DNA of 64,000 nt from Macrostomum lignano (taxonomy: Eukaryota), in contig NIVC01000493.1 in assembly GCA_002269645.1 (NCBI GenBank), forward strand, positions 372,001-436,000, read 5' to 3'. The translations under genes were made by a program, and so were the position numbers. The notes under the pieces were generated by a model. The model saw nothing but the letters and a program-made list of their open reading frames with translations, made no database searches and had not been told where the DNA came from. This document shows, in pieces, positions 1 to 26,279 of this stretch. The stretch's first letter is position 1. Each line of letters starts with the position of its first letter.

Positions 1-1385
1 AGGCTGGTGTGATTTCAATTCTTGCACTGATTTTTTAAACAAAAATTCTCGAATCGGCATTGTACCATGACCTTTGTGCCCGCTGGGCACTTATTCTTGC
101 CTTTTTATGCCATAGACTACATTTAAGCCCGCTTGCAGGAGTCACACTTACTTTAATGCAAATTAGCGGGCAGTTAATATCATTAACTAATTTTGTCCCA
201 CTTTGTCAAGGACACAAATGTCTATGGCACAATGATAACGGCGCCCTCTGATTTTCCCATTAACGCCCTTAAAGCATGGGTATTAATGTACTATTCTGTG
301 TATATTCTGTGCTCTATACTAGGCGACCTCAATACTCTTTGAGCTACACAGATTATTGTTTACGTGGGGCAGCTCTGCCTTCAGACCACAGACTTCCTTG
401 ACCCAGCCAAGGAGTTCTACAACCAGCAACCTGGTGTGGAAACGAGTTTTTCAGTTTTGCCTCATTAGGCCAGACTAGCATAGACAGAGTCAGACAGAGC
501 CATAGACATTCAGTGCTGGCTCCTTATCTTTACAATTGGCATGGCCTCATGAGGTAAAGCTCGCTTCCACTCCAGGTTGCTAATTATAGAACTCCTTGAC
601 CCAGCTGTATGGATTTTCCAGTTTTTTCCATAGACATTTTCACGTTCCGACGCTTACTCTCCTCGAGGTTTTGGCTCGTTTCAACCAAGGAGCTCTATAA
701 TTAGCACCTTGCTAATTAGCACCTTGCTAATTATAGAACTCCTTGGTTTTAACCCTCTGCAGCCTGTCAATATTGCTCTATAACGTATTGATGCCTTATG
801 ATCAGTTTGACTGAGATATTTCAAAGTCCTTAAAATTGCCTTATTTCAATTCATGTATCAAAACCAATTAAAATTAATTAAAAATAATTTCAATAGTTTG
901 TAATTACTCAGATACAAAGCCTCATAAGTTATTTACTTATAGTTTGATTTTAATTTTTATCAAATTAAAAAAGTCCACAAAGTTTCAACCGATTGAAATT
1001 TGGAATGCTTGCCTTAAAGGCGTGATTTTTTTTCATTTTTAATGCAAAAACTTAGACGCGCAAATATAACCACTTGTGATTTGGGTGGCGCTGTTGGCCG
1101 CTAGATATATTTGCTGAATAAGTAGCTTCTTGTGGGAGCTTAACAGTCAAAGCCATTGGCTATGCGTTTGCAGACCACTGCGGCATGAGTTGGTTGGGAT
1201 CAACTCATAGGGTAGGGGTTGCTCATCAATGGTTTTAGTTTTAAGCAGGTTCGCGGCCCAGGTCCTTATTTCGCGTCGTAGGGCATGGTATAGTAGCAGA
1301 ACTTCTTGGCCCAACTGGAAATCGGTTGCAGTTGCGATGAGATTACACTTATGCTTAATGAAGCGCAGTGCTACGCAGTGTGAAC

Positions 1386-1952
1386 TTACGTTGGCGCAGT
1401 GCAGCAGTACCTCTGCAGCATACAGTAGTTGCAGTGCCGGTAGCAGCAGGCATCCAGCACAGCACTCTCGGCTGAAATCAATTTTAATAAGGAACAAAAA
1501 TAAATCTATTTAGTCAGACGAACTCTGTACACAGCATCAAGCAGTTGCTGCGTCACGAGCTCACCAACTACACTGTTGCGCTCACCAGGGTGCATTGTGC
1601 TCCAAGGCAGTGAGCCGCCGCCCGTCTGTCTGTCGTCCGGCAGCACCTGCAGTTTGGAGAAATCGACGTCCCGCTTGGATGGAGCTTCGCCGGAAGCTTT
1701 TTTGCACGCCGCGTTGCTGGAGTTGTACAGGCCCACCTCTTTGCACAGCACCATGATGGTGCTGAGCAGTCTGCGCAAGTTGCAGGACCGGATGCGCTTG
1801 TGCGCGTACTCGTTCAGCCGGTTGGCCTCCTCCAGAGTCATCTTTGATGAAGCTGAAGCCATTGGCAGCAGCAGCAAAGGCAGCAGCAGCAGGGGCATTA
1901 GGAGAAGCGGCATGCACCCTGCAGACAGGTGAGGCATTGATAAATTAGACAT
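1386..1952 (-). CDS. Insulin-like peptide precursor 1 (2 coding exons: 1952-1565, or 1952-1586 with the alternative donor; 1471-1386), about 157 or 150 aa
   Basis: Hydrophobic signal peptide (MPLLLMPLLLLPLLLLPMASA); B-chain-like HKR-IRSCNLRRLLSTIMVLCKEVGLYN; dibasic KR at APSKR. Phase-1 GTGAGC donors at 1585 and 1564, TTTCAG acceptor ending at 1472. Exon 2 translates AESAVLDACCYRHCNYCMLQRYCCTAPT-stop, containing the insulin A-chain motif CC-x3-C-x8-C. Confidence 0.88.
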
Positions 1953-2189
1953 AGGAAGTGGCTGAGCGAGAGACTGTTAGACTTACTCGAAGACCTTCCG
2001 CCGAAAAGCGCGGCTCCGCTAGCCATTGAAGCTACAGGTAGTGCTAGCTGCCTTCAAAAAAGAGCAGGTAAAGGAAACGCCCACACAGTTTAGACGGGAA
2101 AACTATAAGTGCACTCCTGAAAGACGCCTTTTTTAGTCGAGCCTTGGACGAGTGGCAGATAAATCAGTTTTGAGGGCCGGGAGTAGCAG

Positions 2190-2310
2190 CAATTTATTGG
2201 CTTCAGTGGCCAATCAGTGCGCGCTGATGCAGCTGCATAAGCCAATGATTGAAATTCTGCTCGACTCGGTTTGATTGGCGCGGAAACAGGAAGACGCCAG
2301 GTGGGCGGTC
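2190..2310 (-). promoter_or_regulatory. CCAAT-box cluster plus GC box upstream of ILP1
   Basis: ATTGG at 2196 and 2274, CCAAT at 2210 and 2242, GGGCGG at 2303, all 240-360 bp upstream of the ILP1 ATG. Confidence 0.4.
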
Positions 2311-2984
2311 AGCAAATATTGCATCGAAGGGGCGAGGCTTGAAATCTGGGAATCCAACTTTCAGGAAATCCGATTTCTAAGCAAAGAAGTATTTATAAGG
2401 GAAAGCATACTTGCACGTGTAGGGTAGCTACTTTTGAAGAATAGATATATAATACTGACTAATTACGTGTGTGAGGGCGGTTCTGCCGAACGTAATGTGC
2501 ATGCGTGGGCATGCTCAGGGATCAGTGGAAGGGCTTGATTTGCCGTAGTGACCAAAGCTCCCTAAGAACTAACTAACAGGAAAGTTCAGTTCATTAGTTC
2601 AAACAACGGAGGCTTCAAGTTGAAGACACTCAGACTCAAACCAAGTTGAGCATACGCACATGTACAAAAACACCATGATTCACTTCAAGGTTATAAAAGT
2701 GGAGTCACAGGGCGCACCCCAGCGCTCGGGTTTGAACATAAGCAGCGCTGCCGAATAACGACAGATTCCTGCCCTGGCCTATGGTACGATGCCTGTAGGA
2801 CTCGTTCAAATGACGTTACACGTCTTTTGGACGGGCCATGCCGGCGCGGCGATAAAGTAGGCTATGTTTGTGACTCAATCGTCGCCCATTCTGTAAAGCA
2901 ACAAAGTAACGACAGACGATTGTCGACTTGCAACTTGCAAATCTGTCAAAGCCCAAGTTTTGGGCGCTGTAGACTTAACCACTC

Positions 2985-3400
2985 AAGTAACAACTACAGC
3001 CTGGTTTGGTAGGGCCTCCGACTGCAGGACCGCCATCAAAGAACGAAAGGCAGCTAAATCAAGCCAGCAGCAATGCTGCAGATCCGTAGGCCACTTGTGC
3101 CACAATGGGGCCGGAACAGCAGCATCCGGTTGACAGCTTCGCAGCTCAGCACTGAAGGCAGATGCTCCACTTTCTTTAAGTCCTGTGGTGCCCGGCTTCT
3201 TAAGAATTGCGACGATGTGTGCCGTGGTCATTTCGTTGGGTGCCTCCTCTCACCGACGAGCACGCGCGGTTCATCACTCTGGTGACCTCAATACCCAGAG
3301 TGGATGGGCAATGCCTGTAGCAGGCACAGCTACAAACAGATGCAACTGTGTTTGGATAGGCTATTTTTTGCCTTTGAGAAAAGACGTTACTGTTCGACAC
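2985..3400 (-). mobile_element. Degenerate LINE (CR1/L2-like) reverse transcriptase C-terminal / 3-prime fragment
   Basis: Minus-strand frames give VTRVMNRAC...HRRN and LWHKWPTDLQ...LAAFRS, resembling the LDRVQxRA, HRRxVA and WNxLP...FK motifs of LINE ORF2 C-termini; frameshifted. Confidence 0.45.
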
Positions 3401-4764
3401 TGAATTGCGTTCAATTTAAGAATTAATGAGACTTATGAGCTAATTAAAAAGAATTCAATCGGATTAAATCGTTTTTAATTTTATTGAATGAGGCCTTCTA
3501 ATTAATTTTTTAAGCCCTTTGTAAAATGGTACAAAGAATTTTAACGAAGCTGCTCATTTCAAAATGGCGCGGATCAAATCAAGGCCCTAGGAAATGATTG
3601 CACGACTTAAGCGGATTTTAAGACGCCTGTGAAACAGTTTTAATGATCCAACGCGAGTTATCCTTACCAATTGACGTGCCGTGCCTCGGGAGGCTGGACC
3701 TAATGGACGACAGACGAGTAAGTACACTCAGATATGCGACTTCCAGGAGAGCCATCCAAACACGCATATTTGAAATCATCTGTAAACCAACTTCCGTGAA
3801 CCCAATTTCAAAGGGTTAGAAACTGTGTTAGTTTATCCCCGAAGCAAAACAAATTAATGAAATGGACAACCTATCGGCTTAAACTCAAGGACCTCTAGAA
3901 GTTACAGCTGTAATTAGGTTGTAATTACGGTTGAAGGCCCGATGTTTTTTTTAACTTTTTAAACTGCTAGAAGCGGGAAAAACTTGAAGTACAGTGTGTT
4001 CTCCCTAAATGAGTTTTTGGATATTGTATTGCATCGAATGACGTTTTACCATAGACAATCTCGGGATAAGAAAAATCCCCAATTAGAAAAAATTCATTGC
4101 GGAGGCCAGGAAGAACGGGGATTTTGCTAAGTTTTCAGCGTTTGTTCGGACTCTTGGAGCAGTTTTTCTGAATTTAAGCCATTGTCCATAAAACTCGAGT
4201 AACGTTCAACCGTAACTTTAAATGATGCCTGTCTTCAAGCGTACGCTGCTAGTTTCTGATGCTCCAGTCGTTAGTACGACATAAGTATGCCTTAAGCTGT
4301 TACAAGTTGCAAATTGTCGATGTGTTCTATCGTCAGCATTGAATATTGGAAATATGCAGTAAAACACACTACTATTCGCTCTAAAAAAAAAAAAAAAAAA
4401 ACACTGTTAAATTGCCTTTTGAGTTCAGAATTAGGAGCAAGCGAAGTTTTCTGGGACCTGAGTCCCCGACTTCAGGTTTATTTGTAAATTTTCACCGGCA
4501 GTTGAGTTTGAAATGAGCAACTGTGAGCACTACAAATATGCACGGTTCAACCCAAGCATATCTGGGCTCAATACTTGTTAAACAAAGTAAGGTCAGAAAT
4601 TGCCATTCGTAATCATTCGTGAATCCACTGTTGTCCAGCGACCTCCGAGAAGGCTTAACACCAGTTTTCAACCCAGCTGGAATAGTGTCAGGGAGGGGAA
4701 AATGTGATGAAAAACCGGTGAAGTCGCGAGTTCCAGTTGTTACCAAACACGAACAGCATTTGTC

Positions 4765-5310
4765 TTACGCCGGCTGCGATTTGCAGAACCTTTGAAGCTC
4801 GCAAAGTGAACAGCCCGTCTCGTTTTTGCAGCATCTCTGTAGAACTGGTTTCAGGATCTCTGCAACAAGGTTGCGCAATGTACGTCTCAGTTTTGATTAC
4901 AGTTAGAAATTTGAACAGCGCAATGCATACTAAAATGGAATATAAAACCCACCGGCAATATCGGAGCTGCGCCGCCGTCTGGCGAGAAACCGCAGCTGCA
5001 CACTGGTGTTCAGGCCGACGCCAGCGCAGGCGGTCCCGAGCACTTCGAACAGCTTCCTGGCGTTGCAAGTTCTGAACTTCTCCTTGGGTAGAAACACTTT
5101 ACCATTGATGCCGATCTTTGGCGGATTGGCTTGGCTATTCGAGCAACTGCACAGCAACAGAAGCGTCAGAACGAGCAGGGCTGCAACGAGTTTGTTGTGG
5201 TGTTGATAGTGAGTTCACATTTTCATCGAAAAATATAAAGAATGAACAACGACCTGCGACATGAAGCATTCGCTCTCACCTGCACTCAGAATTCCAGCGG
5301 AGACGGCCAT
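4765..5310 (-). CDS. Insulin-like peptide precursor 2 (3 coding exons: 5310-5280, 5180-4953, 4859-4765), 117 aa
   Basis: Spliced product: MAVSAGILSAALLVLTLLLLCSCSNSQA-NPPKIGINGKVFLPKEKFRTCNARKLFEVLGTACAGVGLNTSVQLRFLARRRR-SSDIAEILKPVLQRCCKNETGCSLCELQRFCKSQPA-stop. Introns are CAG|GTGAGA...TTGCAG (99 nt) and CCG|GTGGGT...TTGCAG (93 nt), both phase 1, and the frame is preserved. B and A motifs align with ILP1. Confidence 0.9.
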
Positions 5311-5416
5311 TATCACAATCCGAATAATGACTCCAGCGGAAGAGATTGACGAGGCTGCCTGGTCCAAGAATCGAGCGCTGTTCCAGGCTGGAAGTTCCGA
5401 TCAGAGACTTTAGCAA

Positions 5417-5440
5417 CTTTTATAGACATCTACAGCCAAT
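5417..5440 (-). promoter_or_regulatory. TATA box (TATAAAAG on minus) and CCAAT box upstream of ILP2
   Basis: Plus-strand CTTTTATA at 5417-5424 and CCAAT at 5436-5440, 107-130 bp upstream of the ATG. Confidence 0.5.
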
Positions 5441-5664
5441 CGGATGGGCCCAAACGCCTTGAAGTTGGGGATTATCGCTGCGGTCAATTAGCTTTAACGG
5501 TTCGATTGGTGCATCCGGGAGCCGGGAGCCGGAATTCGAAGTGGGGAATCTCTGTAATTTCTTTTTCAAAATTAGGCAGACAAACTTATTTAACTTAGCT
5601 TTGAGCATTGTCTGAAAGCAATTCAGTATTTTTTTCATTTTTTCGGTAACGATTCAAACTTTAA

Positions 5665-5790
5665 GTTGGTCACATAATCATTGAAACTGGGGAGTTGGTC
5701 ACATAATCATTGAAACTGGGGAGTTGGTCACATAATCATTAAAACTGGGGAGTTGGTCACATAATCATTGAAACTGAGGAGTTGGTCACT
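5665..5790. repeat. 29-bp tandem repeat x4 (GTTGGTCACATAATCATTGAAACTGGGGA)
   Basis: Units start at 5665, 5694, 5723 and 5752. Confidence 0.9.
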
Positions 5791-6359
5791 TTTTTAAACT
5801 AATTCGTACATGTAAATAGTTATTGGTATCCTGAGAGCGCAGGAGCAGGCCGTGCTGCAACAACTGCATCAGCTACCTGGAACTTAGAACCGTTGCCAAA
5901 GATAAAGGAAAAAGTGTCTGGTAATTCAGGATGTAAAATGACTTAACAGTCCAGGTTTTGCTCATTGTTACCAAATTTCCCGTTTTTGAACAAAATGCTG
6001 AACAGGAGCGCTCTCAGACCAAGTACTTTTGTGCTGGACGGCGTGTGCCTGGCGTTTTTTGATTGTGCACTTCGTCATACAAAATGGGCTGGAGTTTGCA
6101 TTGGCACCCTCAGTAGTTACCAGACACGGACGCAGGCAATCGGTGTAGCGCCGAGTGCGTGCCTGACTTCGCCAGTAGGGTGCCTGCAGCGTCAGCAGTG
6201 GCACATCTTGAACCGGCTAGAGGCAGTACAACTCGGCGCAGACAATTTGGAGTGCCGAAAGCTTCGACTTGCTGTTCGAGCGAGTCTGTCAGCGCTCAGG
6301 TCTCAGCGTTGTACTAGTACAGCAAGAGGTCTCACCGTCCAACGCATCAACTCCGTTCC

Positions 6360-6600
6360 TGCGGCGGTCTGGTAGGGTCTCAGACTGCAGGACCGCCCCA
6401 CAAAACTGCAGCCTTCAACTCAGCGTGCAGAACGGTAACTGCTGGCACAGCTGTTCTGAAATCAGCTGCAGTGAGTCTCTCCAGAGCATTTGTTCAGTTG
6501 AAAGATGACTCTCCACAGAGGAATTCAAGAGGAGCTCCTGTGGTTCCGCATCGCCAGCTCTTCATCATTGTTGTGGACTATGTGGTTTGGTAATGGGAGT
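6360..6600 (-). mobile_element. Probable degenerate LINE 3-prime fragment
   Basis: Shares the 28-nt block GGCGGTCCTGCAGTCxGAGxCCCTACCA with the 2985-3400 fragment; upstream frame NALERLTAADFRTAV resembles a LINE ORF2 terminus. Confidence 0.35.
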
Positions 6601-6845
6601 GGCTAAATTCTGGTCCCACATCATGTCGCGCAAATATTACTACAACTACAAGTTAGACTGCCCACGGTTCTCAAAATCTCGTACATCTTCCGCCCCAACT
6701 AAATTGTTTTACGAGCGTAAAGTCGACACGGCGACACATACAGAAAATAATAATCAAGATGTGACAACCCTAATGCTCCGGCAAAAAAACTGGTTCGCTG
6801 GGAGCACATGACAATTAAGCTGCTTCGTGAGTAGCGGCAGCTATA

Positions 6846-6965
6846 GGGGGGCCGTAGCCTAGTGGTTATTATAAGCACGGCGCTCTGATGTGCCAGCGGT
6901 CCAGGCTTGATTCCAAGTGCAGTCACATTAACTTGGGTCTAAATTGGAATCTCGCCTTGGCTCTG
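6846..6965 (+). mobile_element. tRNA-derived SINE, family 2, copy 1
   Basis: GGGGCCGTAGCCTAGTGG (A box) ... GGCTTGATTCC (B box) followed by AAGTGCAGTCACATT...AATTGGAATCTCG; near-identical copy at 50739. Confidence 0.65.
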
Positions 6966-7699
6966 TGCGCCAGGTTGCACACAGTTTGTCTCTAATAAAG
7001 CATCTGTACAATAGACTGTTGGCTAAATACCAGCTCAATACTGAGGTGCTTAGAAGAGAAGTTTTTATCACGCTTCCTAAGTACTCGGGTCACGAGTTCG
7101 AGCACGCCATGGATCACCAGCATATCAAATCTTTAACTAAGGCAATGAAAACCAGTCGATAAATTTTTCTGCATCAATCAAAGCGATGAACAGTCTATTC
7201 AAGTTAGAAATGAGAGACTGACAACTTCTACTCAAAAGTCCAAAAAAGGATTTTAGCTATTTCAGAACAGCATCAGCAGAAATTGTACTTTGCAAGAGAG
7301 ATTTAAAAAGACTGGCTGACAGGTTGGATGGACCTGCATTTGATGGGTCTGATATGGCGGGCTACGCTCGGGAGGGCACCAGCCATGGCGTGCGTCACGA
7401 AGAGATTAGATGATGGCCCGCGGGTTGAGCAGCTATCTCCGCCTGCTCGAGTACTTTTTCCGAACTATTTAACTTTCACCTATAATGATCATTGGGGCCC
7501 GCGCAGATTATGCATGAGAGCTATTTGCTAAATTTCGCCTTTTCACTCCTTGTTCTCATTTTCAGGTATAAAAATATGTTCAGGTGTTTGCTTTGAGCAC
7601 AATTTTGGCCCCGACTAGCGTCCAGTTTTAGCGCGTGATAACCGTGTACGAACGCAGATGCAGAGCCGTATCTGCAGCTCAAATGGCTAAAGGAAAATT

Positions 7700-8250
7700 G
7701 GCGGCGCAATGGCCAATTATGCGGGCGCACAAAGAAGCCCTCGACGCCAGGAAAGCCGGCATCAAAGGCGGCAAAGAAGATAGTTGGAGATTGCTTGAAA
7801 GGGAATGCTAGAAGACATAATCGGACCGCTATGCTTGTATAGCTGAGCTGCGAGTGAGACGCAGATGGGCTCAGCCATATTTGACCACTTTTGGGGGCAC
7901 AGAATGCCGTCTTCTTTTGGAGAAAATTTCAGAAATAACTGCCGAGCAATCAGGCACGAGGTGTGTGCACCGGCACTATCATGATCTGCGCAGAGGCGGC
8001 TCAGGTGGCCCCAGGAGCATCGCATTTATGCCGCGGTTCTTTGAGACTGCTCAAAGGCCTATTGTGATGCCGATCGTGATTTCGCCATCCGGCTGACGTT
8101 ATAGAAATTTTAGCGCAGCCGTGCCACCCACATGATGAATCTGGCGATGATTTGGCTACGAGGACTGAACAAATCATCAATAGCGATTTCGTACGAAATT
8201 GGCCTGAAATATCTTTCCCGCTCACAAAACGTCGTTCAGACATCAAAAAA
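7700..8250 (-). mobile_element. Degenerate LINE reverse transcriptase fragment
   Basis: Broken minus-strand frames GEITIGITIG and WGHLSRLCADHDSAG resemble the ILGV/T.D and LGxLxR segments of CR1/L2 RT C-termini; stops and frameshifts throughout. Confidence 0.35.
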
Positions 8251-9455
8251 TACAGCGCCAAAGCAATTTTGCAGCGCAATCAAAAACAGCTTCGAACAAT
8301 GGCAAAGTGGTAAACACGTGGTCTGACTCTCTGGTAAGTGGTAAACACGTGAGATTAACCCTCTAATGGGTCTACAATAACACTGGCTGCCAGCAGTCTT
8401 ACAACACTAACCAGCTTTGCCACGCAGCAGTCAAACAGCTGGCAGGGAATTTATCGAAAGGCAATTTTCTGGAAGTCAATTTTATGCAAGATTTGCGGAA
8501 GTGCATTGTCACCCAATCTCACTGTTGATTGACACAAGCTGGTATTGCACGTTTTCCTTTTGAATCGAACCAGGAATCGCGAGTCGTGACGCAAAGATCA
8601 CAACGGGGCCTGAGCTACTCTGGAGCATCCGTTAGGAATGTCGATACTTCTGTTGCAGAAGCTATAGTGCTTATCCGACTCAAGCAGCTTTAATCAAGAA
8701 ATAAGAAATAATCAAGTAGGCAATGAGAAAACATGACATAAGGGAATTAGTGCTGCACAACACAACCAGGAGTGTCACAAGCGGGCACGATGTGTATCAT
8801 ATTAAGTAAATATTCTCATTATGGCTCAAAATTTGCACATAGCGAGCGGTTTGCGCACTTTCAAATGACACGCACTAGAAAGCAAAAGTTAGAAATAAAC
8901 AATAGAATTAGAGAAGACAGCAAGAAAAAAAGACAAATAGAATATTAGAACACTGGCGAACTGATGGAAATATTAAAGCAAATTAATCAAATCATTTGAA
9001 CTCTACAAACCAGCCCTAAACTGATTGAAAATAGGATGAAGCAGAAACTTTAACCGCCTAGTGATGAGTCGACAGTGTCCAGCAAAAGTTTTTTAACACA
9101 AACAAAGAAAAATTTGACTAAAAGGGAATTTTATTTCATGCAGGGAGAAAAGAAGAGCCTTCATGTTTATGAACGATTTAATTATGTGTTCAAGATCAAC
9201 TCTTGAAAGTAAATATTTGCATGGACTAGGTACGCCTAGGTGTAGAAGCAGAATCTGATGCAGTCCTTTGCACCCGACAGACAGAGCAATGGCCGACTTA
9301 AGAGTGAAATTATTATATAATGGACACCTTCACGCGTGACACAGCACAAGGAATTGCTTATTAAGATAACCAGCAGGATTCAGCTAAGCTAGAAGTGAAC
9401 TTTCTGAACAAAAACAAGCACAAAAGTCCTATTGGAAAAGCCTTCAAAGCCCGCC

Positions 9456-12314
9456 TCACTCCGAATAGTCGTATTCGGTTGAGCCGCCGTCAGAATCATC
9501 GGCGCCAGGTCTGGCGCCACCGCCGCCGCGCCGCTGCCTGGCGTCAATATCCGACTCGTCGTCGTAGTCGGAGTCGGCGTCGTCCTGGTCGCTGGAGTCG
9601 TACACCGGCTTCTTCACCGGCACCTCGGCGGCCGGCAGTACATCCAGCCGGATTGGCAGGTTCAGCTCGAGGTCAAGGTAGGAGTCGGAGCGCAGACACA
9701 GGGTGTAGGTGTAGCTGCCCGGCTTGTCCGGCGCTTGGAAGCGAAGCGGAACCTGCCGCGCAAATTGGGATTGCAGAGATTTAGACAGAGTATTGCAACT
9801 TGGGATTGTGGTATAATAGATTGAGTTCCCAGCATTGCAGTATGACAGATTGAGATTGCAGGATTGCAGGATTGGGATTGCAGGATTACAGTATTGGGAT
9901 TGCAGGATTGCAGCATTGGGATTGCAGGATTACAGTATTGGGATTGCAGGATTGCAGTATTGGATTGCAGGATTGCAGTATTGGGATTGCAGGATTGCAG
10001 TATTGGGATTGCAGGATTGCAGTATTGGGATTGCAGGATTGCAGTATTGGGATTGCAGGATTGCAGTATTGGATTGCAGGATTGCAGTATTGGGATTGCA
10101 GGATTACAGTATTGGGATTGCAGGATTGCAGTATTGGATTGCAGGATTTCAGTATTGGGATTGCAGGATTGCAGTATTGGGATTGCAGGATTGCAGTATT
10201 GGGATTGCAGGATTGCAGTATTGGGATTGCAGGATTGCAGTATTGGATTGCAGGATTGCAGTATTGGATTGCAGGATTTCAGTATTGGGATTGCAGGATT
10301 GCAGTATTGGGATTGCAGGATTGCAGTATTGGGATTGCAGGATTGCAGTATTGGGATTGCAGGATTGCAGTATTGGGATTGCAGGATTGCAGTATTGGGA
10401 TTGCAGGAGTGCAGTATTGGGATTGCAGGATTGCAGTATTGGGATTGCAGGAGTGCAGTATTGGATTGCAGGATTGCAGTCTTGCAGAATTGGGATTGCA
10501 GGATTGCAGTCTTGCAGAATTGGGATTGCAGTCTTGCAGTCTTGCAGAATTGGGATTGCAGTATTTCCGTATTGCAATTGAGCACAAAATTCAGATTTTG
10601 CAAAATCACAAGCCGGAGAGCTAATTTTTGCCTGGCATTAGGCGTCACTAAGCCAGCTTTTAAATTACAAAGGAAAGATGCACGCACTACACAAGATCAA
10701 TAGGGAATTCTGCTTGAAGCGTGACAAAAAGTGGCCATTTTTAGAATTATCAATTAAATTAAATTAAAACATGCAGAAAAAAAGTCTACCATGTCACCGA
10801 CAGACGGCCAGAAAGACGGCATTCACGTGAGATTAGCTAGCACGCAATTGCATTCATAGATTATTGCTTTTGAATTGTTTATGAGTTGTTTTTCCCATCA
10901 ACATGGATATCAGAAAGATAGAAGGCAGTTGTACAAGCATATGAAAAATTCTGATTTAGTATAGAACCATCGGTGGAAGAACCTCGGCGGGAGAAACTCA
11001 AGCAGAAGAAACTCGATGGGAGAAACTCAAGCAGAAGAAACTCGATGGGAGAAAATCGATGGCAGAAACTCGATGGGAGAAACTCAAGCAGAAGAAACTC
11101 GATGGGAGAAACTCAAGCAGAAGAAACTCGATGGGAGAAACTCAAGCAGAAGAAACTCGATGGGAGAAAATCGATGGCAGAAACTCGATGGGAGAAACTC
11201 AAGCAGAAGAAACTCGATGGGAGAAAATCGATGGCAGAAACTCGATGGGAGAAACTCAAGCAGAAGAAACTCGATGGGAGAAACTCAAGCAGAAGAAACT
11301 CGATGGGAGAAACTCAAGCAGAAGAAACTCGATGGGAGAAAATCGATGGCAGAAACTCGATGGGAGAAACTCAAGCAGAAGAAACTCGATGGGAGAAACT
11401 CAAGCAGAAGAAACTCGATGGGAGAAACTCAAGCAGAAGAAACTCGATGGGAGAAACTCAAGCAGAAGAAACTCGATGGGAGAAACTCAAGCAGAAGAAA
11501 CTCGATGGGAGAAACTCAATGGGAGAAACTCGATGGGAGAAACTCAATGGGAGAAACTCGATGGGAGAAACTCAATGGGAGAAACTCAATGGGAGAAACT
11601 CGATGGGAGAAACTCAAGCAGAAGAAACTCGATGGGAGAAACTCAATGGGAGAAACTCAATGGGAGAAACTCGATGGGAGAAACTCGATGGGAGAAACTC
11701 AAGCAGAAGAAACTCGATGGGAGAAACTCGGTGGGAGAAACTCGATGGGAGAAACTCGATGGGAGAAACTCGATGGGAGAAACTCGATGGGAGAAACTCA
11801 AGCAGAAGAAACTCGATGGGAGAAACTCGGTGGGAGAAACTCGATGGGAGAAACTCGGTGGGAGAAACTCGGTGGGAGAAACTCGATGGGAGAAACTCGG
11901 GAGAATCGAGCTCACCTGCTCTGTGTCATCGAGCGAGGTGATGAACACGGGCTGGGTGAGCAGCTTGGACACGCGCTTGTCGCAGATGTACAGCCACCAG
12001 AACTCGAGCTTCTCGCCCGGGAACATCGGGCAGTGCACGACTCGAGTTGTCCGACTCCGCGTATCCAGCGAGTTGTCCCTGCGCAGCTGCTCCTGCACCC
12101 GGTCCCAGCCGCTCTCGCCGTCGGACTCGTCGCCGTCCCGACTGGCGCCTGCACCGTCCGCCTCGTCGGCATCTTCGTCGGGCGCCTCGGCGGCCGGCTG
12201 CTGCTGGGCGTCGCCGTCGACGGACATTTCGACCAGCGGCGGCAAATCGTCGTCTTCGTCGTTCTCGGTGTTCCGTCCGGCTTCATCGTTTGCCGAAGCA
12301 GCGGCGGATTGCTT

Positions 12315-12349
<35 letters not shown>

Positions 12350-15300
12350 TGGCCTGCTGCTTCGGTTTACTCTTTCCCTTACCCTTGTTCAGCCAACTGT
12401 CCTTGCCGCGCTTCTTCTTCTGCTGCTGCTGATGATGATGCGACTGTTGAGGCTGCTGCGACGAATTCTTTGCCGGGGAGCCGTCGGTGCCGACCGTCGA
12501 GCCGCCGTTTGACGTCGGCGATGCCGCCGTCAGCAAATCATCTTGGCAGCCATTTTGAAGCAGAGTGTGCTGCCGCTGCGACTCATCGTCTCCTGCTTCG
12601 TCGAATTGGTTGGCGGAGGCATCGTCACCGACTGCGGAGGTGGCCGACATCAGCTCGGCCAGGTCGCGCCGCGTCAGGGTCACCGTCACCGTGACCAGGC
12701 TGCTGGCGGTCACCTGCATAGTTACCGGGGCGGTGTGGGTGGCGCATAAAACTTCGAACCGTATAAAAACTGCTATAAGGTTTTCTAAATTCGGGACTGC
12801 CGCTATCCTTTGGATATCTATCCCAGATCTTAAGTTATTAACACCGCAGATGGAGCCAAATATATAAAATCTCCCCAAATATCCCAGATCCCAAATTTAA
12901 TATTGACTACTTTTACTACTACTATTACTAGACTCGGAGGGTTTTTAGTCTACTTGTTAGGGCGCTCGACTCAAAACTGAAAGGTCGGGGCGGGGGTTCG
13001 ATTCCCAATCCCACTGGAACAATTTGTGTCCTTGAGCAAGATACTTAACTCTGCATTGCTTCAGTTCACCCAGCTGTAAAATGGGTGCCAGCATTAGCTG
13101 GGGTAATTGAGGGCGTGTGGCGACCCCCAGTCCTTGGACTGAACAGCCGTACGCTGCCTTCAGCTGCGCCGCGCAGTAGCTGCGGCTGAGCTGTCGGTTT
13201 CTGGGCAGGTGTAATACTGTAAGTACTAACTACTGCTACTACTGCTATTACTACTACTACTATTACTACTACAAATCTCAGATCTCCCCAGAATATCCCT
13301 GATCCCATTCGCCCAGCCGCTCACCTGCTCCGGTTTGTCATCGTCGATGACCTCAATTTTGCTCTGCACGTCGACCTGCGGCATGCCGGCGCACACGGTC
13401 ATAACATCGCGGTACTGGTCCTCGGTCAGGCTCCTAAGCAGCGCCCGCCGCTCGCTATCCGGCATCAGGGCCAATTGTCGAATAGTTCGAATATTTCGCT
13501 TCCTAGTAACAAAATGACGCAACGAATCTTCGGATATGTGCGGCAGCTGCAATATTGGACTCTTGTTCTCCCATAGGCCCTGGACAATCATGGGGCTCAG
13601 CTTCATGATGCACTCGATAGTCTCTAAGCGGGGGTGGCCACAGCGGCTACCGTAGTACTGGGCGCAGGCCACAAGCTGCATGCTAAGTGACACCATCTCC
13701 TGCAGCAGGGCCGGGCACTTGCATACAACTGTCCGCCTATCGACCTCCAGCGTATTGGGGTTCAGGTCCAGCCGGCTGAGATGCGCGTGCAGCAACACGC
13801 GAGCCTTCAAAGCGTATGGCAGACAGAACGGTGGCTCCTTGTTCTTTTCGTTTACCTGAGGCAGCTGCTTCATCACCATTGGAACCTGGACAGGGAATAG
13901 GCGAGGCAAAACTAATCATTATTCTTTCAGGTTATTAAAGCTGAGTCAAGATTGAGGCTGAAAAAGGTAATAGGGGATGAGACGAGAGGGAGACAAAGTT
14001 AAGGGGAGTAGGTTAAGGGAAGACAGTGAGGAGACAAGGTTAAGAGGAGAAGGGTGAGAGGGAGACAAGGTTAAGAGGAGAAGGGTGAGAGGGAGACAAG
14101 GTTAAGGGGAGAAGGGCGAGAGGGAGACAAGGTTAAGGGGGAGGGTGAGAGGGAGACAATGTTAAGGGGGAGATGAGATGGAGACAGGGTTACGGTGAGA
14201 AGGGTGAGAGGGAGACAAAGTTGAGGGGAGAAGGGTGAGAGGGAGACAAAGTTAAGGGGAGAAGGGTGAGAGGGAGACAAAGTTAAGGGAGAAGGGCGAG
14301 AGGGAGACAAGGTTAAGGGGAGGGTGAGAGGGAGACAATGTTAAGGGGAGATGAGATGGAGACAAGGTTAAGGGAGAGGGTGGGAGGGAGACAAGGTTAA
14401 GGGAGAGGGTGAGAGGGAGACAAGGTTAAGGGAGAGGGTGAGAGGGAGACAAAGTTAAGGGGAGAAGGGTGAGAGGGAGACAAAGTTAAGGGGAGAAGGG
14501 TGAGAGGGAGACAAGGTTAAGGGAGAGGGTGAGAGGGAGACAGGTTAAGGGAGAGGGTGAGAGGGAGACAATGTTAAGAGGAGAAGGGTGAGAGGGAGAC
14601 AAGGTTAAGGGGGAGGGTGAGAGGGAGACAATGTTAAGGGGGAGATGAGATGGAGACAGGGTTACGGTGAGAAGGGTGAGAGGGAGACAAAGTTGAGGGG
14701 AGAAGGGTGAGAGGGAGACAAAGTTAAGGGGAGAAGGGTGAGGGGGAGACAAAGTTAAGGGAGAGGGTGAGAGGGAGACAAGGTTAAGGGAGAGGGTGAG
14801 AGGGAGACAAGGTTAAGGGAGAGGGTGAGAGGGAGACAAGGTTAAGGGAGATGGTGAGAGGGAGACAAGGTTAAGGGAGAGGGTGAGAGGGAGACAAAGT
14901 TAAGGGGAGAAGGGTGAGAGGGAGACAAGGTTAAGGGAGAGGGTGAGAGGGAGACAAAGTTAAGGGGAGAAGGGTGAGAGGGAGACAAGGTTAAGGGGAG
15001 AAGGGTGAGAGGGAGACAAGGTTAAGGGAGAGGGTGAGAGGGAGACAAAGTTAAGGGGAGAAGGGTGAGAGGGAGACAAGGTTAAGGGAGAGGGTGAGAG
15101 GGAGACAAGGTTAAGGGAGAGGGTGAGAGGGAGACAGGTTAAGGGAGAGGGTGAGAGGGAGACAAGGTTAAGGGAGAGGGTGAGAGGGAGACAAGGTTAA
15201 GGGAGAGGGTGAGAGGGAGACAAGGTTAAGGGAGAGGGTGAGAGGGAGACAGGTTAAGGGAGAGGGTGAGAGGGAGACGGGTTAAGGGAGAGGGGATGAG

Positions 15301-18300
15301 GAATGATGGTGAGCGACAAGGTTAGTTATGGGGAGAACAGGAGATTATAGACTTCAGACAATGTCATGCTCTAAATCAGACATCAAACCGCTCTGACTGA
15401 CCTCTTCGTTGTCTGACGGTCGTTCAACCACTTCGGGATTCTGCAGCCGATTGAACTCGCAGGCGCTGGCCAGAATCATTAAGATGCGCCTAAACGACAT
15501 ATTAGGCGTGCGCATAAGGAAATAGCGAAATATTTCCGTAGTCTGCAGCAATATCGACTCGCCAGTGAACTTGATGGTTCTGTACCACCAGGTTCCAACC
15601 ACCACAGGCAGCAGCACCATGAATACGAGGCCGTAGACGCCAAGCACTAGCATGCTGTTCTCTTGGCGGACCAGCCATTTAGGCAGAGCGATGCCGAAAT
15701 TAATAGCCGTAGGGCCGTCAGGACTGCCGTGGATTTCCCAATTCTTTCTGTCCTGTTCGTTAGTGAGAGCCCGGTAGGCCTTGGAGATCTGCTGGAATAC
15801 CTGCGGATCGCCGCCTTTGTCTGGGTGATGCGTCAGTGACAGCTGGCGATAGGCTCTGCGAATGTCCATCGGACTGGCGCCCTGAACAGATTGACGGGGG
15901 TAGAAACAATATAATTTATACGCGCGCTTCTAATTTTACTACTAGTAGTAGAAATGCAAGAAAAAATCTAGCGATATTTTTAAGTCATTAAACATTTCAT
16001 AAAAAATTGTAGTATGCTTTTAGCACTACTTATAAAAGTAGCGAATCACGCGAATAATGTATAAATACGAAGGTAGGAAATCAAACATACTGTAATAAAT
16101 CAACAATTTACAATTACCTACCCGATCAATGCCCAGAACATTGTAGGGATCGAAGTCCATCCATTCGACCTTAATTGTGTTCACCTTGTACAACAGCACT
16201 GCCAGTATTATCCATAAGACAAAGAACAAAAGCTTCCTGTAATTGAAAAGTACATAAGTAACTCATGTCAGCTTAAATTACATTATTTCCGAGGCCAAGA
16301 ATAGAAACTTACAATAACTTTTTCTTTCGCTCTTTCCATGGCGAAAAAGATTTCAACAGATGCCGCTTCATCTGGCAGCCGTCGCAGTGACATTTCCGCT
16401 TGCCTTGCTCGATGCGATCTACGAATTTCAGGCCAGTGAAAATTGTAATCTGTCACACGGGTTAAGGCTAATGGGGGATCGCTTATATGTCAAGGCTTAT
16501 GGGGGGGGAATTGCTTAGATGTCAAGGCTTATGGGGGAATTGCTTAGATGTCAAGGCTTATGGGGGAATTGCTTAGATGTCAAGGCTTATGGGGGAATTG
16601 CTTAGATGTCAAGGCTTATGGGGGAATTGCTTAGATGTCAAGGCTTATGGGGGAATTGCTTAGATGTCAAGGCTTATGGGGGAATTGCTTAGATGTCAAG
16701 GCTTATGGGGGAATTGCTTAGATGTCAAGGCTTATGGGGGAATTGCTTAGATGTCAAGGCTTATGGGGGAATTGCTTAGATGTCAAGGCTTATGGGGGAA
16801 TTGCTTAGATGTCAAGGCTTATGGGGGAATTGCTTAGATGTCAAGGCTTATGGGGGAATTGCTTAGATGTCAAGGCTTATGGGGGAATTGCTTAGATGTC
16901 AAGGCTTATGGGGGCGCTGATAGAAGTGTCATAGACATGAAAAGTGTCAGGTCAAAAATAAGAGTCATGTAAAACATAAATAAGCATCTGTAAGACATAT
17001 AGAAGTGACATGTCGAACATAGAAAATTTATTTGGGAAATGCTACGACGTCAAAGCTTGAAGGAAATTGCTATAATGTGACTTTTGGGGAGAATTACTGA
17101 AATTTCAAGGTTTATAGGGGAAGAACTTCTAAGAAGTCAAGGCTTTAGGGTTAGGGTTGGGGTTAGGGTTACAATTAGGATTAGGGGGAATTGCTAAATA
17201 GGAGAGTTAGGGGGAATGGGGGATATTTCAAAGCTGACAAAGGATTTGTTGACATTTCAAGGCTGACAGGGGAGTTGTTGAGATTTCAAGGCTTATTGGT
17301 GGCATTTCTGAGATGTTAAGGCACATTGGGGGATTGTTGAAATGTCAAGGCTTATAGGCAGTGCTGGGCACTGGTCCGTTAATAAGTGTTAATCCATTAA
17401 TAAGCATTAATATTTCTCATTAATGTTAACGGACTGCCATTAAGATTTTTTGAACTAACAGATTAACGAATTTGTGTTAATTATTTTGTGAGTTAACAAA
17501 AAATTCATTGTTAACATCAAAGACAGTGTCAAGACAAACGATGCAAAGAAAAAACAAAAATACAAGTCTGGCAAGAAGTTACAACATTACAAATGTATTT
17601 GAATTTACCTAAATGTCTAATTAATCTCTTTGATTATGACAATGATCATGCAGATGTAACAACTTCTTACTAATGAACTTTAATAATGAATTAAAATTGT
17701 GAACTTTATTGCTTGTGTGTGAGCATTGATTGCTTTGATTCACTTCTTTGCCAATCTTTTGTAACTTTCTGCTGTGCCTGCTAATGCTACTGAAAAAACC
17801 TTCCTATTCGTATTTTATTATTAACTAATTAGCTTTTTAAGTTTCAAATAAATAAGTTAATTTGTTTACTGTATGCTTACTTTTAGTAGTATTATACTTA
17901 CAAGTTTTTACTATTATAATTTTTTGTTATTTTTTTAGCTTGTAAATTGGTTGGATGACCTGTGTTTAGCTAAAAAGATGGAAAAGCAAAAGCAGTGCAA
18001 GATTTCTGTATTTTCTGTGTTAACTTTAACGGATTAACCCTAATTAATGATTATCAGTTAATTTTCAGTTAACTTAATGATATTAAGAGTTAAAAAGTTA
18101 AGATTTTTTGTTTGAACACTAATGCTTTTGCCTTTAATGGAAGTTAAGATTTTCATTAATGGTGCCCAACACTGCTTATAGGGAAAATTGCTGAGATTAC
18201 TGCAAGAAGCTAAATATAATTTATTCTAAGAACTATTCCATTTTCTATTGGCTTAATAATAGGAGGAGCTAATTGCTGGTCTTAACTACATGCAAGAGCT

Positions 18301-23389: not shown

Positions 23390-24289
23390 AGGCCAATGAC
23401 CGCCCCTTGCCTCGCAAAACAAAACTGCATTTTCGGCTGTGTGTTGCTAATGGCGGATCACTTTGTTACTGTTGATTCTATCTGTCGGCTCATCAGAATT
23501 ACATACTAAAAATAGTGCTTTGTGCGCTCTGTTGCCGTCTCAGTGGGCGACAGCCATCAGCCGCTTGCCTCGTCATTGTCATTTGCTTTCCGCATTTTTC
23601 TCTGACGAATGTTCCAAGGTCATTACTGCTTCTCTCTCTCTCCCTGACTCGCTTGCTACTCAAATCTGTCCTCACGCGACCTGTTCCCATATCAAGTCAT
23701 AAATCAGCCCTTCCCATTAAAAATAGGGATGTCCTGCGCCTCGTTGCAGGCGATGAAGCCTTGAAGCTGAGCCAATAGTCGGCACTCCCTTCTCTGAAGT
23801 ATTTTTCTTTGGCCTGACCAATTTTTACACAGTCAAAGTTGCAAATACAATATGTTAAATAATAATTAATCGGCTTCTATTATTAATGTCTGATTGTATT
23901 TTGTTGCACAAATGTTATGCCTCCATTTGTACATTTATATCCTATTTTTAGGGAATTGCCTCTCAATTTCTCTCTCGACTGTCGCTGCTTCATGCTGGCT
24001 GCTACAGAGACGAGACGCTACGGGGGAGGGGATTATCAGACCGGGGGAGGGGGGGGTAAGGGGGTTCGAAAGCTGATTCAGCTTGCTACCGGGAATTTTT
24101 TGAAAAGAAGGCGGATAGTTCCCGTTTCCCGTCCTCGATTCTGGAGGGCATGTCGGTGAGAAAGAAATGTCAAAGAGGCAAAGGATGAGCAGAGTAACTC
24201 GTTGTGCAGTTGGAGACTAACAGATGATTCATGCCGCTTCGAACTCTCAACTAAATGCTTCATCAGTTAACAAATTTATTAAAACATAA

Positions 24290-24940
24290 TAGACAAGGGG
24301 GAGAGAGAGAAGGAGAGAGGAGGAGATAGGAGAGAGGGAGAGAGGAGGAGATAGGAGAGAGGGAGAGAGGAGGAGATAGGAGAGAGGGAGAGAGGAGGAA
24401 ATAGGAGAGAGGGAGAGAGGAGGAGATAGGAGAGAGGGAGAGAGGAGGAGATAGGAGAGAAGGAGAGAGGAGGAGATAGGAGAGAGGGAGAGAGGAGGAG
24501 ATAGGAGAGAAGGAGAGAGGAGGAGATAGGAGAGAGGGAGAGAGGAGGAAATAGGAGAGAGGGAGAGAGGAGGAGATAGGAGAGAGGGAGAGAGGAGGAG
24601 ATAGGAGAGAGGGAGAGAGGAGGAGATAGGAGAGAGGGAGAGAGGAGGAGAGAGGAGAGAGGGAGAGAGGAGGAGATAGGAGAGAGGGAGAGAGGAGGAG
24701 ATAGGAGAGAGGGAGAGAGGAGGAGATAGGAGAGAGGGAGAGAGGAGGAGATAGGAGAGAGGGAGAGAGGAGGAGATAGGAGAGAGAGGGAGAGGGAGAG
24801 AGAAGGAGAGAGGAGGAGAGAAGTAGAGGGGAGGAGAGAGGAGAGTGGAGAGACAAGGAGAGAAGGCGAGAGAGAGAGAGAGAGAGAGAGAGAGGAGGAG
24901 GAGAGAGTTAGGGGAGAGAAGGGAAAGAAAGAGAGAAAGG
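24290..24940. repeat. 25-bp purine-rich minisatellite GGAGAGAGGGAGAGAGGAGGAGATA, then (GA)n
   Basis: Direct reading. Confidence 0.95.
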
Positions 24941-25755: not shown

Positions 25756-26277
25756 GGGGGGGGGCATCACAAACCCGAAAAATATGAACTCCGAAAAGCG
25801 CTTTCCATCATAAACCCGAAATATCATAAACCCGAAATATCATAAACCCGAAATATCATAAACCCGAAATATCACAAACCCGAAATATCATAAACCCGAA
25901 ATATCACAAACCCGAAATATCACAAACCCGAAATATCACAAACCCGAAATATCATAAACCCGAAATATCATAAACCCGAAATATCACAAACCCGAAATAT
26001 CATAAACCCGAAATATCACAAACCCTAAATATCATAACTCCGAAATTGATAGCAACACACATCATAAACACGAAATATCATAACTCCGAAATTGCTAGCA
26101 ACGCACATGATAAACCCGAAAAATCACAACCCGAAATATCATACGAGCATTCTAGCAATGTCCAACACTAGTTTGGTTTTCGGAGATATGATATTTCGGG
26201 TTGTGATTTTACGGGTTTATGATGTGCGTTGCTAGCAATTTCGGAGTTATGATATTTCGGGTTTATGATGGCGACCC
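25756..26277. mobile_element. Mutator-like foldback MITE with internal 16-bp array (CATAAACCCGAAATAT) and 9-bp TSD
   Basis: Ends GGG..GCATCACAAACCCGAAA and TTTCGGGTTTATGATGGCGACCC are inverted; long inverted arms at about 26065-26140 and 26188-26270; ATTTCATTG duplicated at 25747-25755 and 26278-26286. Confidence 0.75.
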
Positions 26278-26279
26278 AT

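What the first reader, a model, noticed from the sequence alone, without database searches (positions are those of the whole stretch)
1386..5310. Tandem pair of divergent insulin-like peptides sharing a non-canonical cysteine framework
Neither gene appears complete in the ORF track. After splicing, both show a B-chain C-x12-C (RSCNLRRLLSTIMVLC / RTCNARKLFEVLGTAC) instead of the canonical C-x11-C, and no Gly after the first Cys. Both carry VGL(Y)N with an N-glycosylation sequon at the same spot (NSS / NTS), an extra Cys at position 3 of the A-chain x8 segment (NYCMLQRYC / SLCELQRFC), and a phase-1 intron just before the A-chain (93 nt in both if the ILP1 downstream donor is used). Predicted mature regions have odd Cys counts (9 and 7), so each may have one free thiol. 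Inference: a lineage-specific ILP subfamily that could form covalent homo- or heterodimers, or a glycosylated insulin-family ligand with its own receptor.
Basis: partly seen in the sequence, partly recalled or inferred. Interest (0 to 1): 0.85.

Follow-up and report, generated by a model that had tools for sequence, protein, structure and literature searches.

The report
Two tandem flatworm insulin-like peptide genes

Summary
The two insulin-like peptide (ILP) genes are real. Both lie on the minus strand of a Macrostomum lignano scaffold (window = NIVC01000493.1, 100% identical). Most sequence observations hold: B-chain C-x12-C, Asn instead of Gly after the first Cys, a VGL(Y)N sequon, an extra Cys inside the A-chain x8 segment, and a phase-1 intron before the A chain.

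Both gene models were truncated, however. The presumed stop codons (TAA at 1388-1386 and 4767-4765) sit inside GTAAGT/GTAAGA splice donors at the same codon position. Each gene continues into a terminal micro-exon (1314-1266; 4676-4655) encoding W-x3-[FW]-C.

For gene A, the four-exon model is exactly the public, RNA-seq-derived protein PAA69009.1/PAA82142.1 (167 aa, "IlGF domain-containing"). It scores 26.8 bits against Pfam Insulin (cut-off 23).

Mature cysteine counts become 10 and 8, both even. The free-thiol and covalent-dimer inference therefore loses its basis.

Gene B is intact in all three genome copies. It is unannotated and absent from the protein databases searched.

The missing Gly is shared with planarian ILP-1. 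Tandem ILP pairs and 8-Cys ILPs with unusual B-chain spacing are already described. What remains new is a tail-stapled cysteine arrangement plus the x12 spacing, and one unannotated paralogue. Interest is modest.

The parts
1987..2026 (-). Gene A (Mlig005970) exon 1: ATG at 2026-2024, encodes MASGAALFGGRSS + first base of the Arg14 codon; phase-1 donor ttcga|GTAAGT at 1986
   Evidence: Present in public protein P0002, which is identical to the model. The homeolog L001 has a 1-bp deletion here, and its annotated protein P0001 starts at the internal ATG 1913-1911.
1586..1918 (-). Gene A exon 2: rest of the signal peptide; B domain (Cys1..Cys2 = 1784-1743, C-x12-C); VGLYNSS (1736-1716); third B-side Cys (within 1712-1704); KR site (within 1679-1668); C domain. 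Alternative downstream donor at 1564.
   Evidence: The donor at 1585 (ccctg|GTGAGC) is the one used by P0001/P0002.
1390..1471 (-). Gene A exon 3: A domain, CCYRHCNYCMLQRYCC at 1448-1401.
   Evidence: The A domain aligns to IGF-II [21 protein letters not shown].
1266..1314 (-). It adds the 10th mature Cys. ATTAAA lies 222 nt downstream, starting at 1043.
   Evidence: Present in P0001 and P0002. Mapping P0001 onto L001 shows the same junctions.
5280..5310 (-). Gene B exon 1: ATG 5310-5308, MAVSAGILSA; phase-1 donor tgcag|GTGAGA at 5279. It is needed because exon 2 has no in-frame ATG before the B chain.
   Evidence: In frame in all three homeologs (I7T in L001).
4953..5180 (-). Gene B exon 2: signal-peptide core; B domain (5067-5026, C-x12-C); VGLNTS (5019-5002); RRRR furin-type site (4980-4969); phase-1 donor at 4952.
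4769..4859 (-). Gene B exon 3: A domain CCKNETGCSLCELQRFC (4833-4783; CC-x5-C-x8-C with an internal Cys; NET sequon 4824-4816).
   Evidence: The NET sequon is lost (T101A) in homeolog L002.
4655..4676 (-). Gene B exon 4, inferred terminal micro-exon: (A)WVENWC, stop 4657-4655. The acceptor is CCTCCCTGACACTATTCCAG|, after a 92-nt intron. It adds the 8th mature Cys. AATAAA lies 172 nt downstream, starting at 4482.
   Evidence: The donor position and phase match gene A, and so does the W-x3-[FW]-C pattern. The exon is identical in all three homeologs. No transcript evidence is available.

Best explanation
The region carries two tandemly duplicated four-exon genes, in the same orientation and about 2.6 kb apart, encoding secreted insulin/IGF-superfamily prepropeptides of Macrostomum lignano.

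Shared layout:
- A short first exon, then a phase-1 intron.
- Signal peptide, B domain and C domain, then the family-typical phase-1 intron.
- The A domain, then a phase-2 intron.
- A terminal micro-exon encoding a short D-domain-like tail with one Cys.

Cysteines. After signal-peptide removal, gene A has 10 Cys and gene B has 8.
- Six of them occupy the canonical insulin positions (inferred to form A6-A11, A7-B7 and A20-B19).
- The pair shared by both genes, Cys A14 and the tail Cys, most likely forms a fourth intramolecular disulfide that staples the tail back onto the second A helix (inferred).
- Gene A's further pair (A21 in 'YCC' and a Cys 13 residues after B19) would form a fifth bond. 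It resembles the A21-to-B-chain bond of 8-Cys ILPs such as octinsulin (inferred).

Processing (inferred from sites):
- Gene B would receive a single furin-type cut at RRRR, giving two chains.
- Gene A has a KR at the B/C border and no basic site before the A domain, so it could stay IGF-like single-chain or be cut once.

Function (inferred by homology with planarian ilp-1 and schistosome ILPs): ligands of insulin-receptor-type tyrosine kinases controlling growth, stem-cell and germline activity.

Shown here: the gene structures, family membership by sequence, the even Cys counts, the transcript-derived public model for gene A, and three intact genome copies of both genes.
For: Organism and locus:
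- The window is 100% identical to NIVC01000493.1 of the Mlig_3_7 assembly.

Gene A:
- My four-exon model equals public protein P0002 (167 aa, PAA69009.1/PAA82142.1, UniProt 'IlGF domain-containing') residue for residue.
- The GenBank annotation derives from a genome-guided RNA-seq transcriptome (PMC5730564).
- Pfam Insulin PF00049 scores 26.8 bits, E = 1e-5, above the cut-off of 23.
- The only PDB sequence hits below E = 0.5 are IGF-I/II and DILP A chains.

Gene B:
- BLASTP against gene A gives E = 1e-5.
- It shares all three intron positions and phases with gene A.
- It scores 22.3 bits against an insulin-superfamily HMM built from 8 known members without any M. lignano sequence, with 0 of 2000 shuffles above 10.2 bits. 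Gene A scores 34.4 bits.
- The ORF, all Cys and all splice sites are intact in the three homeologous loci.

Terminal exons:
- Donors overlap the apparent stops at the homologous codon.
- Acceptors have strong polypyrimidine tracts.
- The pattern W-x3-aromatic-C is conserved.

Family context:
- A phase-1 intron in the C domain is the family hallmark, and clustered ILP genes and 8-Cys ILPs are known (PMC8286064).
Against: - Gene B has no transcript evidence. It is not annotated in any of the three copies and has no match in 5.8 billion proteins. It misses Pfam Insulin and has no PDB sequence hit on its own.
- The copies differ by only about 1%, so conservation says little about selection.
- Structure prediction for gene A was poor (pLDDT 46 and 58), and Foldseek found no insulin-like match. 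The fold and the disulfide pairing are therefore inferred, not shown.
- No receptor data exist.
Confidence: 0.8

Rival explanations
1. One reading: each mature peptide has an odd number of Cys, hence one free thiol. The peptides would then form covalent homo- or heterodimers and define a new ligand type.
For: With the three-exon models ending at TAA 1388-1386 and 4767-4765, the counts are indeed 9 and 7.
Against: - Both TAAs lie inside consensus GT donors.
- The transcript-derived public protein for gene A continues into the micro-exon.
- Gene B has the homologous donor, acceptor and W-x3-[FW]-C tail.
- The counts become 10 and 8.
Confidence: 0.05
2. Both forms exist. Because the stop codon is embedded in the intron-3 donor, intron retention would yield a tail-less isoform with an unpaired A14 Cys, alongside the spliced even-Cys form. 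This would be regulated production of two ligand variants.
For: The TAA falls immediately in frame inside the donor in both paralogues, so retention gives a clean truncated product rather than a long read-through.
Against: - GTAAG donors contain TAA by consensus, so an in-frame stop at a phase-2 donor is expected by chance.
- Both deposited gene A protein forms (P0001, P0002) are the spliced form. The GenBank submission was filtered for redundant alternative transcripts, so this does not rule out other isoforms.
Confidence: 0.1
3. Gene B is a silent or decaying duplicate, not a functional hormone gene.
For: - It is unannotated in all three copies of an RNA-seq-based annotation.
- It is absent from the protein databases.
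- Its exon substitution rate between homeologs (5/744) is not clearly lower than that of its introns (6/568).
Against: - There is no nucleotide similarity left between A and B and only 25-30% protein identity. The duplication is therefore old, yet gene B keeps an intact four-exon ORF.
- It retains all eight framework Cys, consensus splice sites, a signal peptide, an RRRR site, a TATAAAAG 114 nt upstream and an AATAAA 172 nt downstream. An old pseudogene would not.
- Small, lowly expressed peptide genes are often missed by transcript-based annotation.
Confidence: 0.15
4. They are relaxin/dilp7/gonadulin-type ligands acting on leucine-rich-repeat GPCRs rather than on the insulin receptor kinase.
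For: - Clustered ILP genes in other bilaterians include GPCR ligands, and 8-Cys members such as octinsulin are proposed LGR ligands (PMC8286064).
- Gene A ends its A domain in 'YCC' like octinsulin.
- A sequon at B25/B26 would sit on the classical receptor-kinase contact strand.
Against: - Neither B helix carries the relaxin R-x3-R-x2-[IV] cassette (direct reading; the cassette is from my own knowledge).
- The best sequence matches are IGF-I/II.
- The octinsulin B chain pattern (C-x10-C-x2-C) is not present.
- The receptor repertoire of M. lignano was not examined.
Confidence: 0.1

Closest known systems
Planarian Smed-ILP-1 and neodermatan ILPs (SjILP, SmILP, FgILP)
   Same: - Flatworm insulin-superfamily prohormones with a signal peptide, B and A domains, and more than six Cys.
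- No Gly after the first B-chain Cys (Smed: C-Q; here C-N).
- The B helix is similar (RLLKAITTLC against RLLSTIMVLC).
- N-glycosylation sequons are present.
   Different: - Smed-ILP-1 has the canonical C-x11-C. Its extra Cys sit at A8 (CCC-x2-C-x8-C) and upstream in the C region. Schistosome ILPs also have CCCX2CX8C.
- The M. lignano pair has C-x12-C, no A8 Cys, an A14 Cys and a tail Cys encoded by a separate exon.
- Schistosome genes have two exons with one large intron. These genes have four exons with introns of 68-114 nt.
Echinococcus multilocularis emilp1/emilp2
   Same: Two ILP genes lie immediately adjacent on one contig in a flatworm (17 kb apart) (PMC3923246).
   Different: - The spacing here is 2.6 kb.
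- The sequences could not be retrieved, so orthology and Cys pattern were not compared.
Vertebrate IGF-I / IGF-II
   Same: - They are the best sequence matches (E = 0.002-0.04): A domain [21 protein letters not shown] against VLDACCYRHCNYCMLQRYCCT, and C-x3-G-[FL]-Y after B19.
- Gene B has a short C domain, and there is a post-A-domain tail beginning x-x-P, like a D domain.
[quoted passage not shown]
   Different: - IGFs have six Cys, C-x11-C and Gly at B8.
- Their 3' intron is phase 0; here it is phase 2.
- The tail here carries a Cys.
Eight-cysteine ILPs: ambulacrarian octinsulin and multinsulins (and C. elegans beta-type insulins, from my own knowledge)
   Same: - A fourth disulfide is predicted, and the positions of the extra Cys differ between classes.
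- Octinsulin ends its A domain in YCC like gene A and has a non-canonical B-chain spacing (C-x10-C-x2-C).
- The genes are clustered.
   Different: - Neither M. lignano gene has the octinsulin B-chain pattern.
- An A14-tail pair was not seen in the one octinsulin sequence translated here.
- Octinsulin genes have only the single phase-1 intron.

Membership tests
Insulin/IGF/relaxin superfamily (Pfam PF00049) | Profile match at or above Pfam's gathering score (23 bits) | tested here: met
Gene A as P0002: 26.8 bits, E = 1e-5.
Insulin/IGF/relaxin superfamily (Pfam PF00049) | Same profile match for gene B | tested here: not met
   No PF00049 hit at E <= 10 or E <= 1, and no PDB sequence hit. Membership rests on paralogy with gene A (E = 1e-5), on 22.3 bits against an ad-hoc superfamily HMM with 0 of 2000 shuffles reaching it, and on shared intron positions.
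Insulin/IGF/relaxin superfamily | A-chain signature CC-x3-C-x8-C | tested here: met
   Gene A has CC-YRH-C-NYCMLQRY-C. Gene B departs from it: CC-KNETG-C-SLCELQRF-C, i.e. x5 in the intrachain loop.
Insulin/IGF/relaxin superfamily | B-chain C-x11-C with Gly after the first Cys | tested here: not met
   Both genes have C-x12-C and C-N. The HMM alignment places a one-residue insertion right after Cys-Asn. Departures are known elsewhere: Smed-ILP-1 lacks the Gly, and octinsulin has another spacing.
Insulin/IGF/relaxin superfamily | Phase-1 intron within the C domain | tested here: met
   Gene A uses donor 1585 (or 1564) and acceptor 1471. Gene B uses donor 4952 and acceptor 4859. Both introns are phase 1. 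This is the family hallmark according to PMC8286064.
Insulin/IGF/relaxin superfamily | N-terminal signal peptide and basic convertase site(s) between the B and A domains | tested here: inconclusive
   By inspection only, since no predictor was available. Both have Leu-rich hydrophobic cores followed by small residues (ASASS|K; SNSQA|N). Gene B has RRRR. Gene A has KR at the B/C border but no basic pair before the A domain.
Insulin/IGF/relaxin superfamily | Insulin fold with three canonical disulfides | tested here: inconclusive
   AlphaFold2 on gene A with 3- and 5-row alignments gave pLDDT 46 and 58. The helices fall where the B and A helices are expected, but Foldseek against PDB gave no meaningful hit.
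Insulin/IGF/relaxin superfamily | Binds or activates an insulin-receptor-type kinase (or a relaxin-type GPCR) | not testable with these tools
   This needs receptor assays.
Planarian/neodermatan flatworm ILP class | A chain CCC-x2-C-x8-C (extra Cys at A8) with a partner Cys upstream | tested here: not met
   Smed-ILP-1 has CCCKSCTMLNLFKYC and schistosomes have CCCX2CX8C. The M. lignano genes have Tyr or Lys at A8 and place their extra Cys at A14, in the tail, and (gene A only) at A21 and 13 residues after B19.
Octinsulin | B chain C-x10-C-x2-C and A chain CC-x3-C-x8-CC | tested here: not met
   The sea-star octinsulin was translated. Only the terminal YCC of gene A matches.

The most novel reading that the evidence does not exclude
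The pair defines a Macrostomum-lineage ILP subfamily with three distinguishing features:
- An exon-encoded C-terminal tail is disulfide-stapled to A14.
- The start of the B helix is lengthened by one residue (C-x12-C).
- An N-glycan sits on the strand that corresponds to insulin B24-B26, the classical receptor-contact surface.
Together these would imply a receptor-binding mode different from insulin and IGF. Gene B would be a previously unrecognised second ligand.
Probability: 0.3. Interest if true: 0.45.

Novelty: new variant of a known kind. Interest (0 to 1): 0.3.

Why it matters
M. lignano is a transgenic, regenerating flatworm model, and insulin signalling controls body size, stem cells and germline in planarians.
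- Knowing that the species has two ILP genes, one of them missing from the public annotation, is directly useful for RNAi and reporter work, as are correct four-exon models.
- The cysteine arrangement (A14 to tail, plus C-x12-C) adds one more solution to the known diversity of four- and five-disulfide ILPs. It could serve as a lineage marker in the way the octinsulin pattern has been used.
- It does not open a new kind of biology. The striking claim of a free thiol and covalent dimers was an artefact of truncated gene models.

Tried and rejected
- **Homologue searches.** Gene A found only its own M. lignano cluster, and gene B found nothing. An A + B + Smed-ILP-1 profile found only P0001 and Smed-ILP-1. 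An exhaustive profile search of 1.84 billion representatives found only P0001. I could therefore not test whether other taxa share the framework.
- **Structure.** Two AlphaFold2 runs on gene A gave pLDDT 46 and 58, and two Foldseek searches against PDB returned nothing useful. I treat this as uninformative rather than as evidence against the fold.
- **Selection test between homeologs.** The copies are about 99% identical, so the test has no power.
- **A third ILP between the genes.** A B-chain-like C-x12-C-x3-GL motif at 3143 (minus strand) has no signal peptide and no A chain nearby. My rough estimate is that about three such matches would arise by chance in the window. Rejected.
- **Gene A exon 1.** I first doubted it was coding because copy L001 has a 1-bp deletion there. 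It is nevertheless part of public protein P0002 in the other two copies. I keep it, with the internal ATG 1913-1911 as an alternative start.
- **Residual DNA similarity.** None was found between the two genes or their promoters.
- **Rfam.** No hits in window 1-12000.
- **Literature.** The held library has no paper describing M. lignano ILPs.


Full report
**Source and setting.**
The window is eukaryotic. A search with the spliced product of the first gene returned a Macrostomum lignano protein. The first 8 kb of the window are 100% identical to scaffold NIVC01000493.1 of assembly Mlig_3_7, GCA_002269645.1. Two further copies of the whole locus exist in the same assembly, L001 on NIVC01001393.1 and L002 on NIVC01001357.1. 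They are 98-99% identical over most of the locus, including both genes. This fits the redundancy reported for this genome (PMC5730564).

**Check of the observation.**
Both genes lie on the minus strand.
- The B-domain segments are RSCNLRRLLSTIMVLC and RTCNARKLFEVLGTAC, each with 12 residues between the Cys.
- Asn, not Gly, follows the first Cys.
- VGLYNSS and VGLNTS follow the second Cys.
- The A-domain segments are CCYRHCNYCMLQRYC and CCKNETGCSLCELQRFC, each with an extra Cys at position 3 of the x8 stretch.
- A phase-1 intron lies just before the A domain.

Two details need correction.
- Gene B has CC-x5-C, not CC-x3-C.
- The '93 nt in both' intron holds for gene A only with the downstream donor at 1564. 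The public models use the donor at 1585, which gives a 114-nt intron.

**The gene models were truncated.**
- In gene A the apparent stop TAA (1388-1386) is part of ccaac|GTAAGT. A 75-nt intron leads to GATTTCCAG|TTGGGCC.., encoding (T)WAKKFCYYTMPYDAK*.
- In gene B the apparent stop TAA (4767-4765) is part of ccggc|GTAAGA. A 92-nt intron with a strong polypyrimidine tract leads to CTATTCCAG|CTGGGTT.., encoding (A)WVENWC*.
- Both donors are phase 2 and lie five codons after the last canonical A-chain Cys. Both tails read W-x3-[FW]-C.
- For gene A this is not only inference. My four-exon model is identical over all 167 residues to public protein P0002 (PAA69009.1/PAA82142.1, BOX15_Mlig005970g3/g1, UniProt 'IlGF domain-containing protein'). 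The copy on L001 is annotated as P0001 with the same junctions. The GenBank annotation was built from a genome-guided RNA-seq transcriptome.

With the tail exon, the mature peptides carry 10 Cys (gene A) and 8 Cys (gene B). The Cys at residue 15 of A and at residues 21 and 23 of B lie in the signal peptides. The odd counts, and with them the free-thiol and covalent-dimer idea, were artefacts of the truncated models.

**Family membership.**
- Gene A as P0002 passes Pfam Insulin (26.8 bits against a cut-off of 23). Its PDB sequence hits below E = 0.5 are all IGF-I/II and Drosophila ILP A chains. The A domain and the C-x3-G-[FL]-Y motif align to IGF-II.
- Gene B alone misses Pfam and PDB. It is nonetheless a clear paralogue of A (BLASTP E = 1e-5; 30% identity over the mature regions) and has the same three intron positions and phases.
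- I built an HMM from eight known superfamily members, none from M. lignano. Gene A scores 34.4 bits and gene B 22.3 bits. None of 2000 shuffles of either exceeds 10.2 bits.
- That alignment puts the extra B-chain residue directly after Cys-Asn, at the start of the B helix. It also puts a two-residue insertion in gene B's A6-A11 loop.

**How unusual are the shared features?**
- Planarian Smed-ILP-1 (sequence in the supplement of PMC2953531) also lacks the Gly (C-Q) and has a similar B helix. It keeps C-x11-C, however, and places its extra Cys at A8 (CCC-x2-C-x8-C), as schistosome ILPs do. Within the flatworm sequences I could obtain, x12 and the A14/tail Cys pair are therefore particular to M. 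lignano.
- ILPs with eight Cys at class-specific positions are well known (octinsulins, multinsulins). A sea-star octinsulin that I translated has a non-canonical B-chain spacing (C-x10-C-x2-C) and ends its A domain in YCC like gene A.
- Adjacent ILP genes are described in Echinococcus and in many bilaterians.
- The phase-1 C-domain intron is the family hallmark.

**Status of gene B.**
- It is not annotated in any of the three copies, and neither similarity nor exact look-up finds it in the protein collections.
- Its ORF, eight framework Cys and splice sites are intact in all three copies. The changes are I7T in L001, and Q27R, T101A and one synonymous change in L002. T101A removes the A-loop NET sequon, so that sequon is probably not essential.
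- No nucleotide similarity remains between A and B, so the duplication is old. An intact ORF after that time argues for function.
- A TATAAAAG lies 114 nt upstream of its ATG and an AATAAA lies 172 nt after its stop.
- Expression remains unproven.

**Likely mechanism.**
- Shown: two secreted-type insulin-superfamily precursors with an even number of Cys.
- Inferred: the three canonical disulfides, plus A14-tail in both genes. The tail (x-x-P-x-W-x3-aromatic-C) can fold back along the second A helix, and AlphaFold models this stretch as a helix, though at low confidence. Gene A would have an additional bond between A21 and the Cys 13 residues after B19.
- Inferred: processing at RRRR in gene B, and at KR (or none) in gene A.
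- Inferred: possible N-glycosylation at the position equivalent to insulin B25/B26.
- Inferred: signalling through insulin-receptor-type kinases, by analogy with planarian and schistosome ILPs.

**What did not work.**
- Structure prediction stayed at low confidence and fold search returned nothing.
- Four large homologue searches found no relatives beyond M. lignano and Smed-ILP-1.
- Whether the framework is shared by other macrostomids therefore remains open.

**Verdict.**
The finding is real but largely ordinary. It is a tandem pair of flatworm ILP genes, one already in the public databases under a generic name and one unannotated. The pair has a variant cysteine framework that is fully paired once the terminal exon is included.

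Noticed in passing
window 1-8000 versus L001, L002, L003: The locus exists in three copies in the Mlig_3_7 assembly. L003 is the window itself, and L001 and L002 are about 98-99% identical over most of the locus. This fits the duplicated genome of this species. Upstream of gene B (about 6300-7000), identity to L001 drops to about 91% with indels.
   Followed up: partly
window 2008 (gene A exon 1) versus L001: Copy L001 has a 1-bp deletion in exon 1 of gene A. This shifts the frame, and its annotated protein (P0001) starts instead at the internal ATG (window 1913-1911). The upstream start is therefore dispensable in at least one copy.
   Followed up: yes
window 4824-4816 versus L002: Gene B carries a second N-glycosylation sequon (NET) inside the enlarged CC-x5-C loop. 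Copy L002 has NEA instead, so the sequon is not fixed among homeologs.
   Followed up: yes
window 5664-5789: A 29-nt tandem repeat (4.3 copies, 96% matches) lies about 350-480 nt upstream of the gene B start codon. BLAST shows register-shifted self-matches there against the other copies.
   Followed up: no
window 2200-2278 and 5424-5509 (minus strand): Both genes have clusters of CCAAT/ATTGG motifs 130-250 nt upstream of the ATG: four for gene A and two for gene B. Gene B also has a TATAAAAG at -114. These are consensus matches only, not tested.
   Followed up: no
window 9834-10576, 10970-11899, about 24250-27740, 32640-35540, 55780-59190: The window holds long arrays of short tandem repeats, which produce spurious long ORFs in several frames. 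The first two ranges were measured with Tandem Repeats Finder (periods 8/22/44 and 14/29/57 nt). The other three ranges are approximate, judged from repetitive ORF translations.
   Followed up: partly
window 29306-30595 (-), 13226-15869 (-), 43827-44570 (-), 40727-41407 (+): Other gene fragments lie in the window. They are an innexin (Pfam E = 9e-50), a DnaJ plus Sec63-Brl pair of exons (a Sec63-like gene), a Cys-loop receptor transmembrane region, and an FkbM-type methyltransferase domain.
   Followed up: partly
window about 3143-3040 (minus strand): A B-chain-like motif (SCEAVNRMLLFRPHCGTSGL, C-x12-C-x3-GL) lies in the intergenic region between the two genes. It has no signal peptide and no A-chain exon nearby, so I judged it a chance match.
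   Followed up: yes
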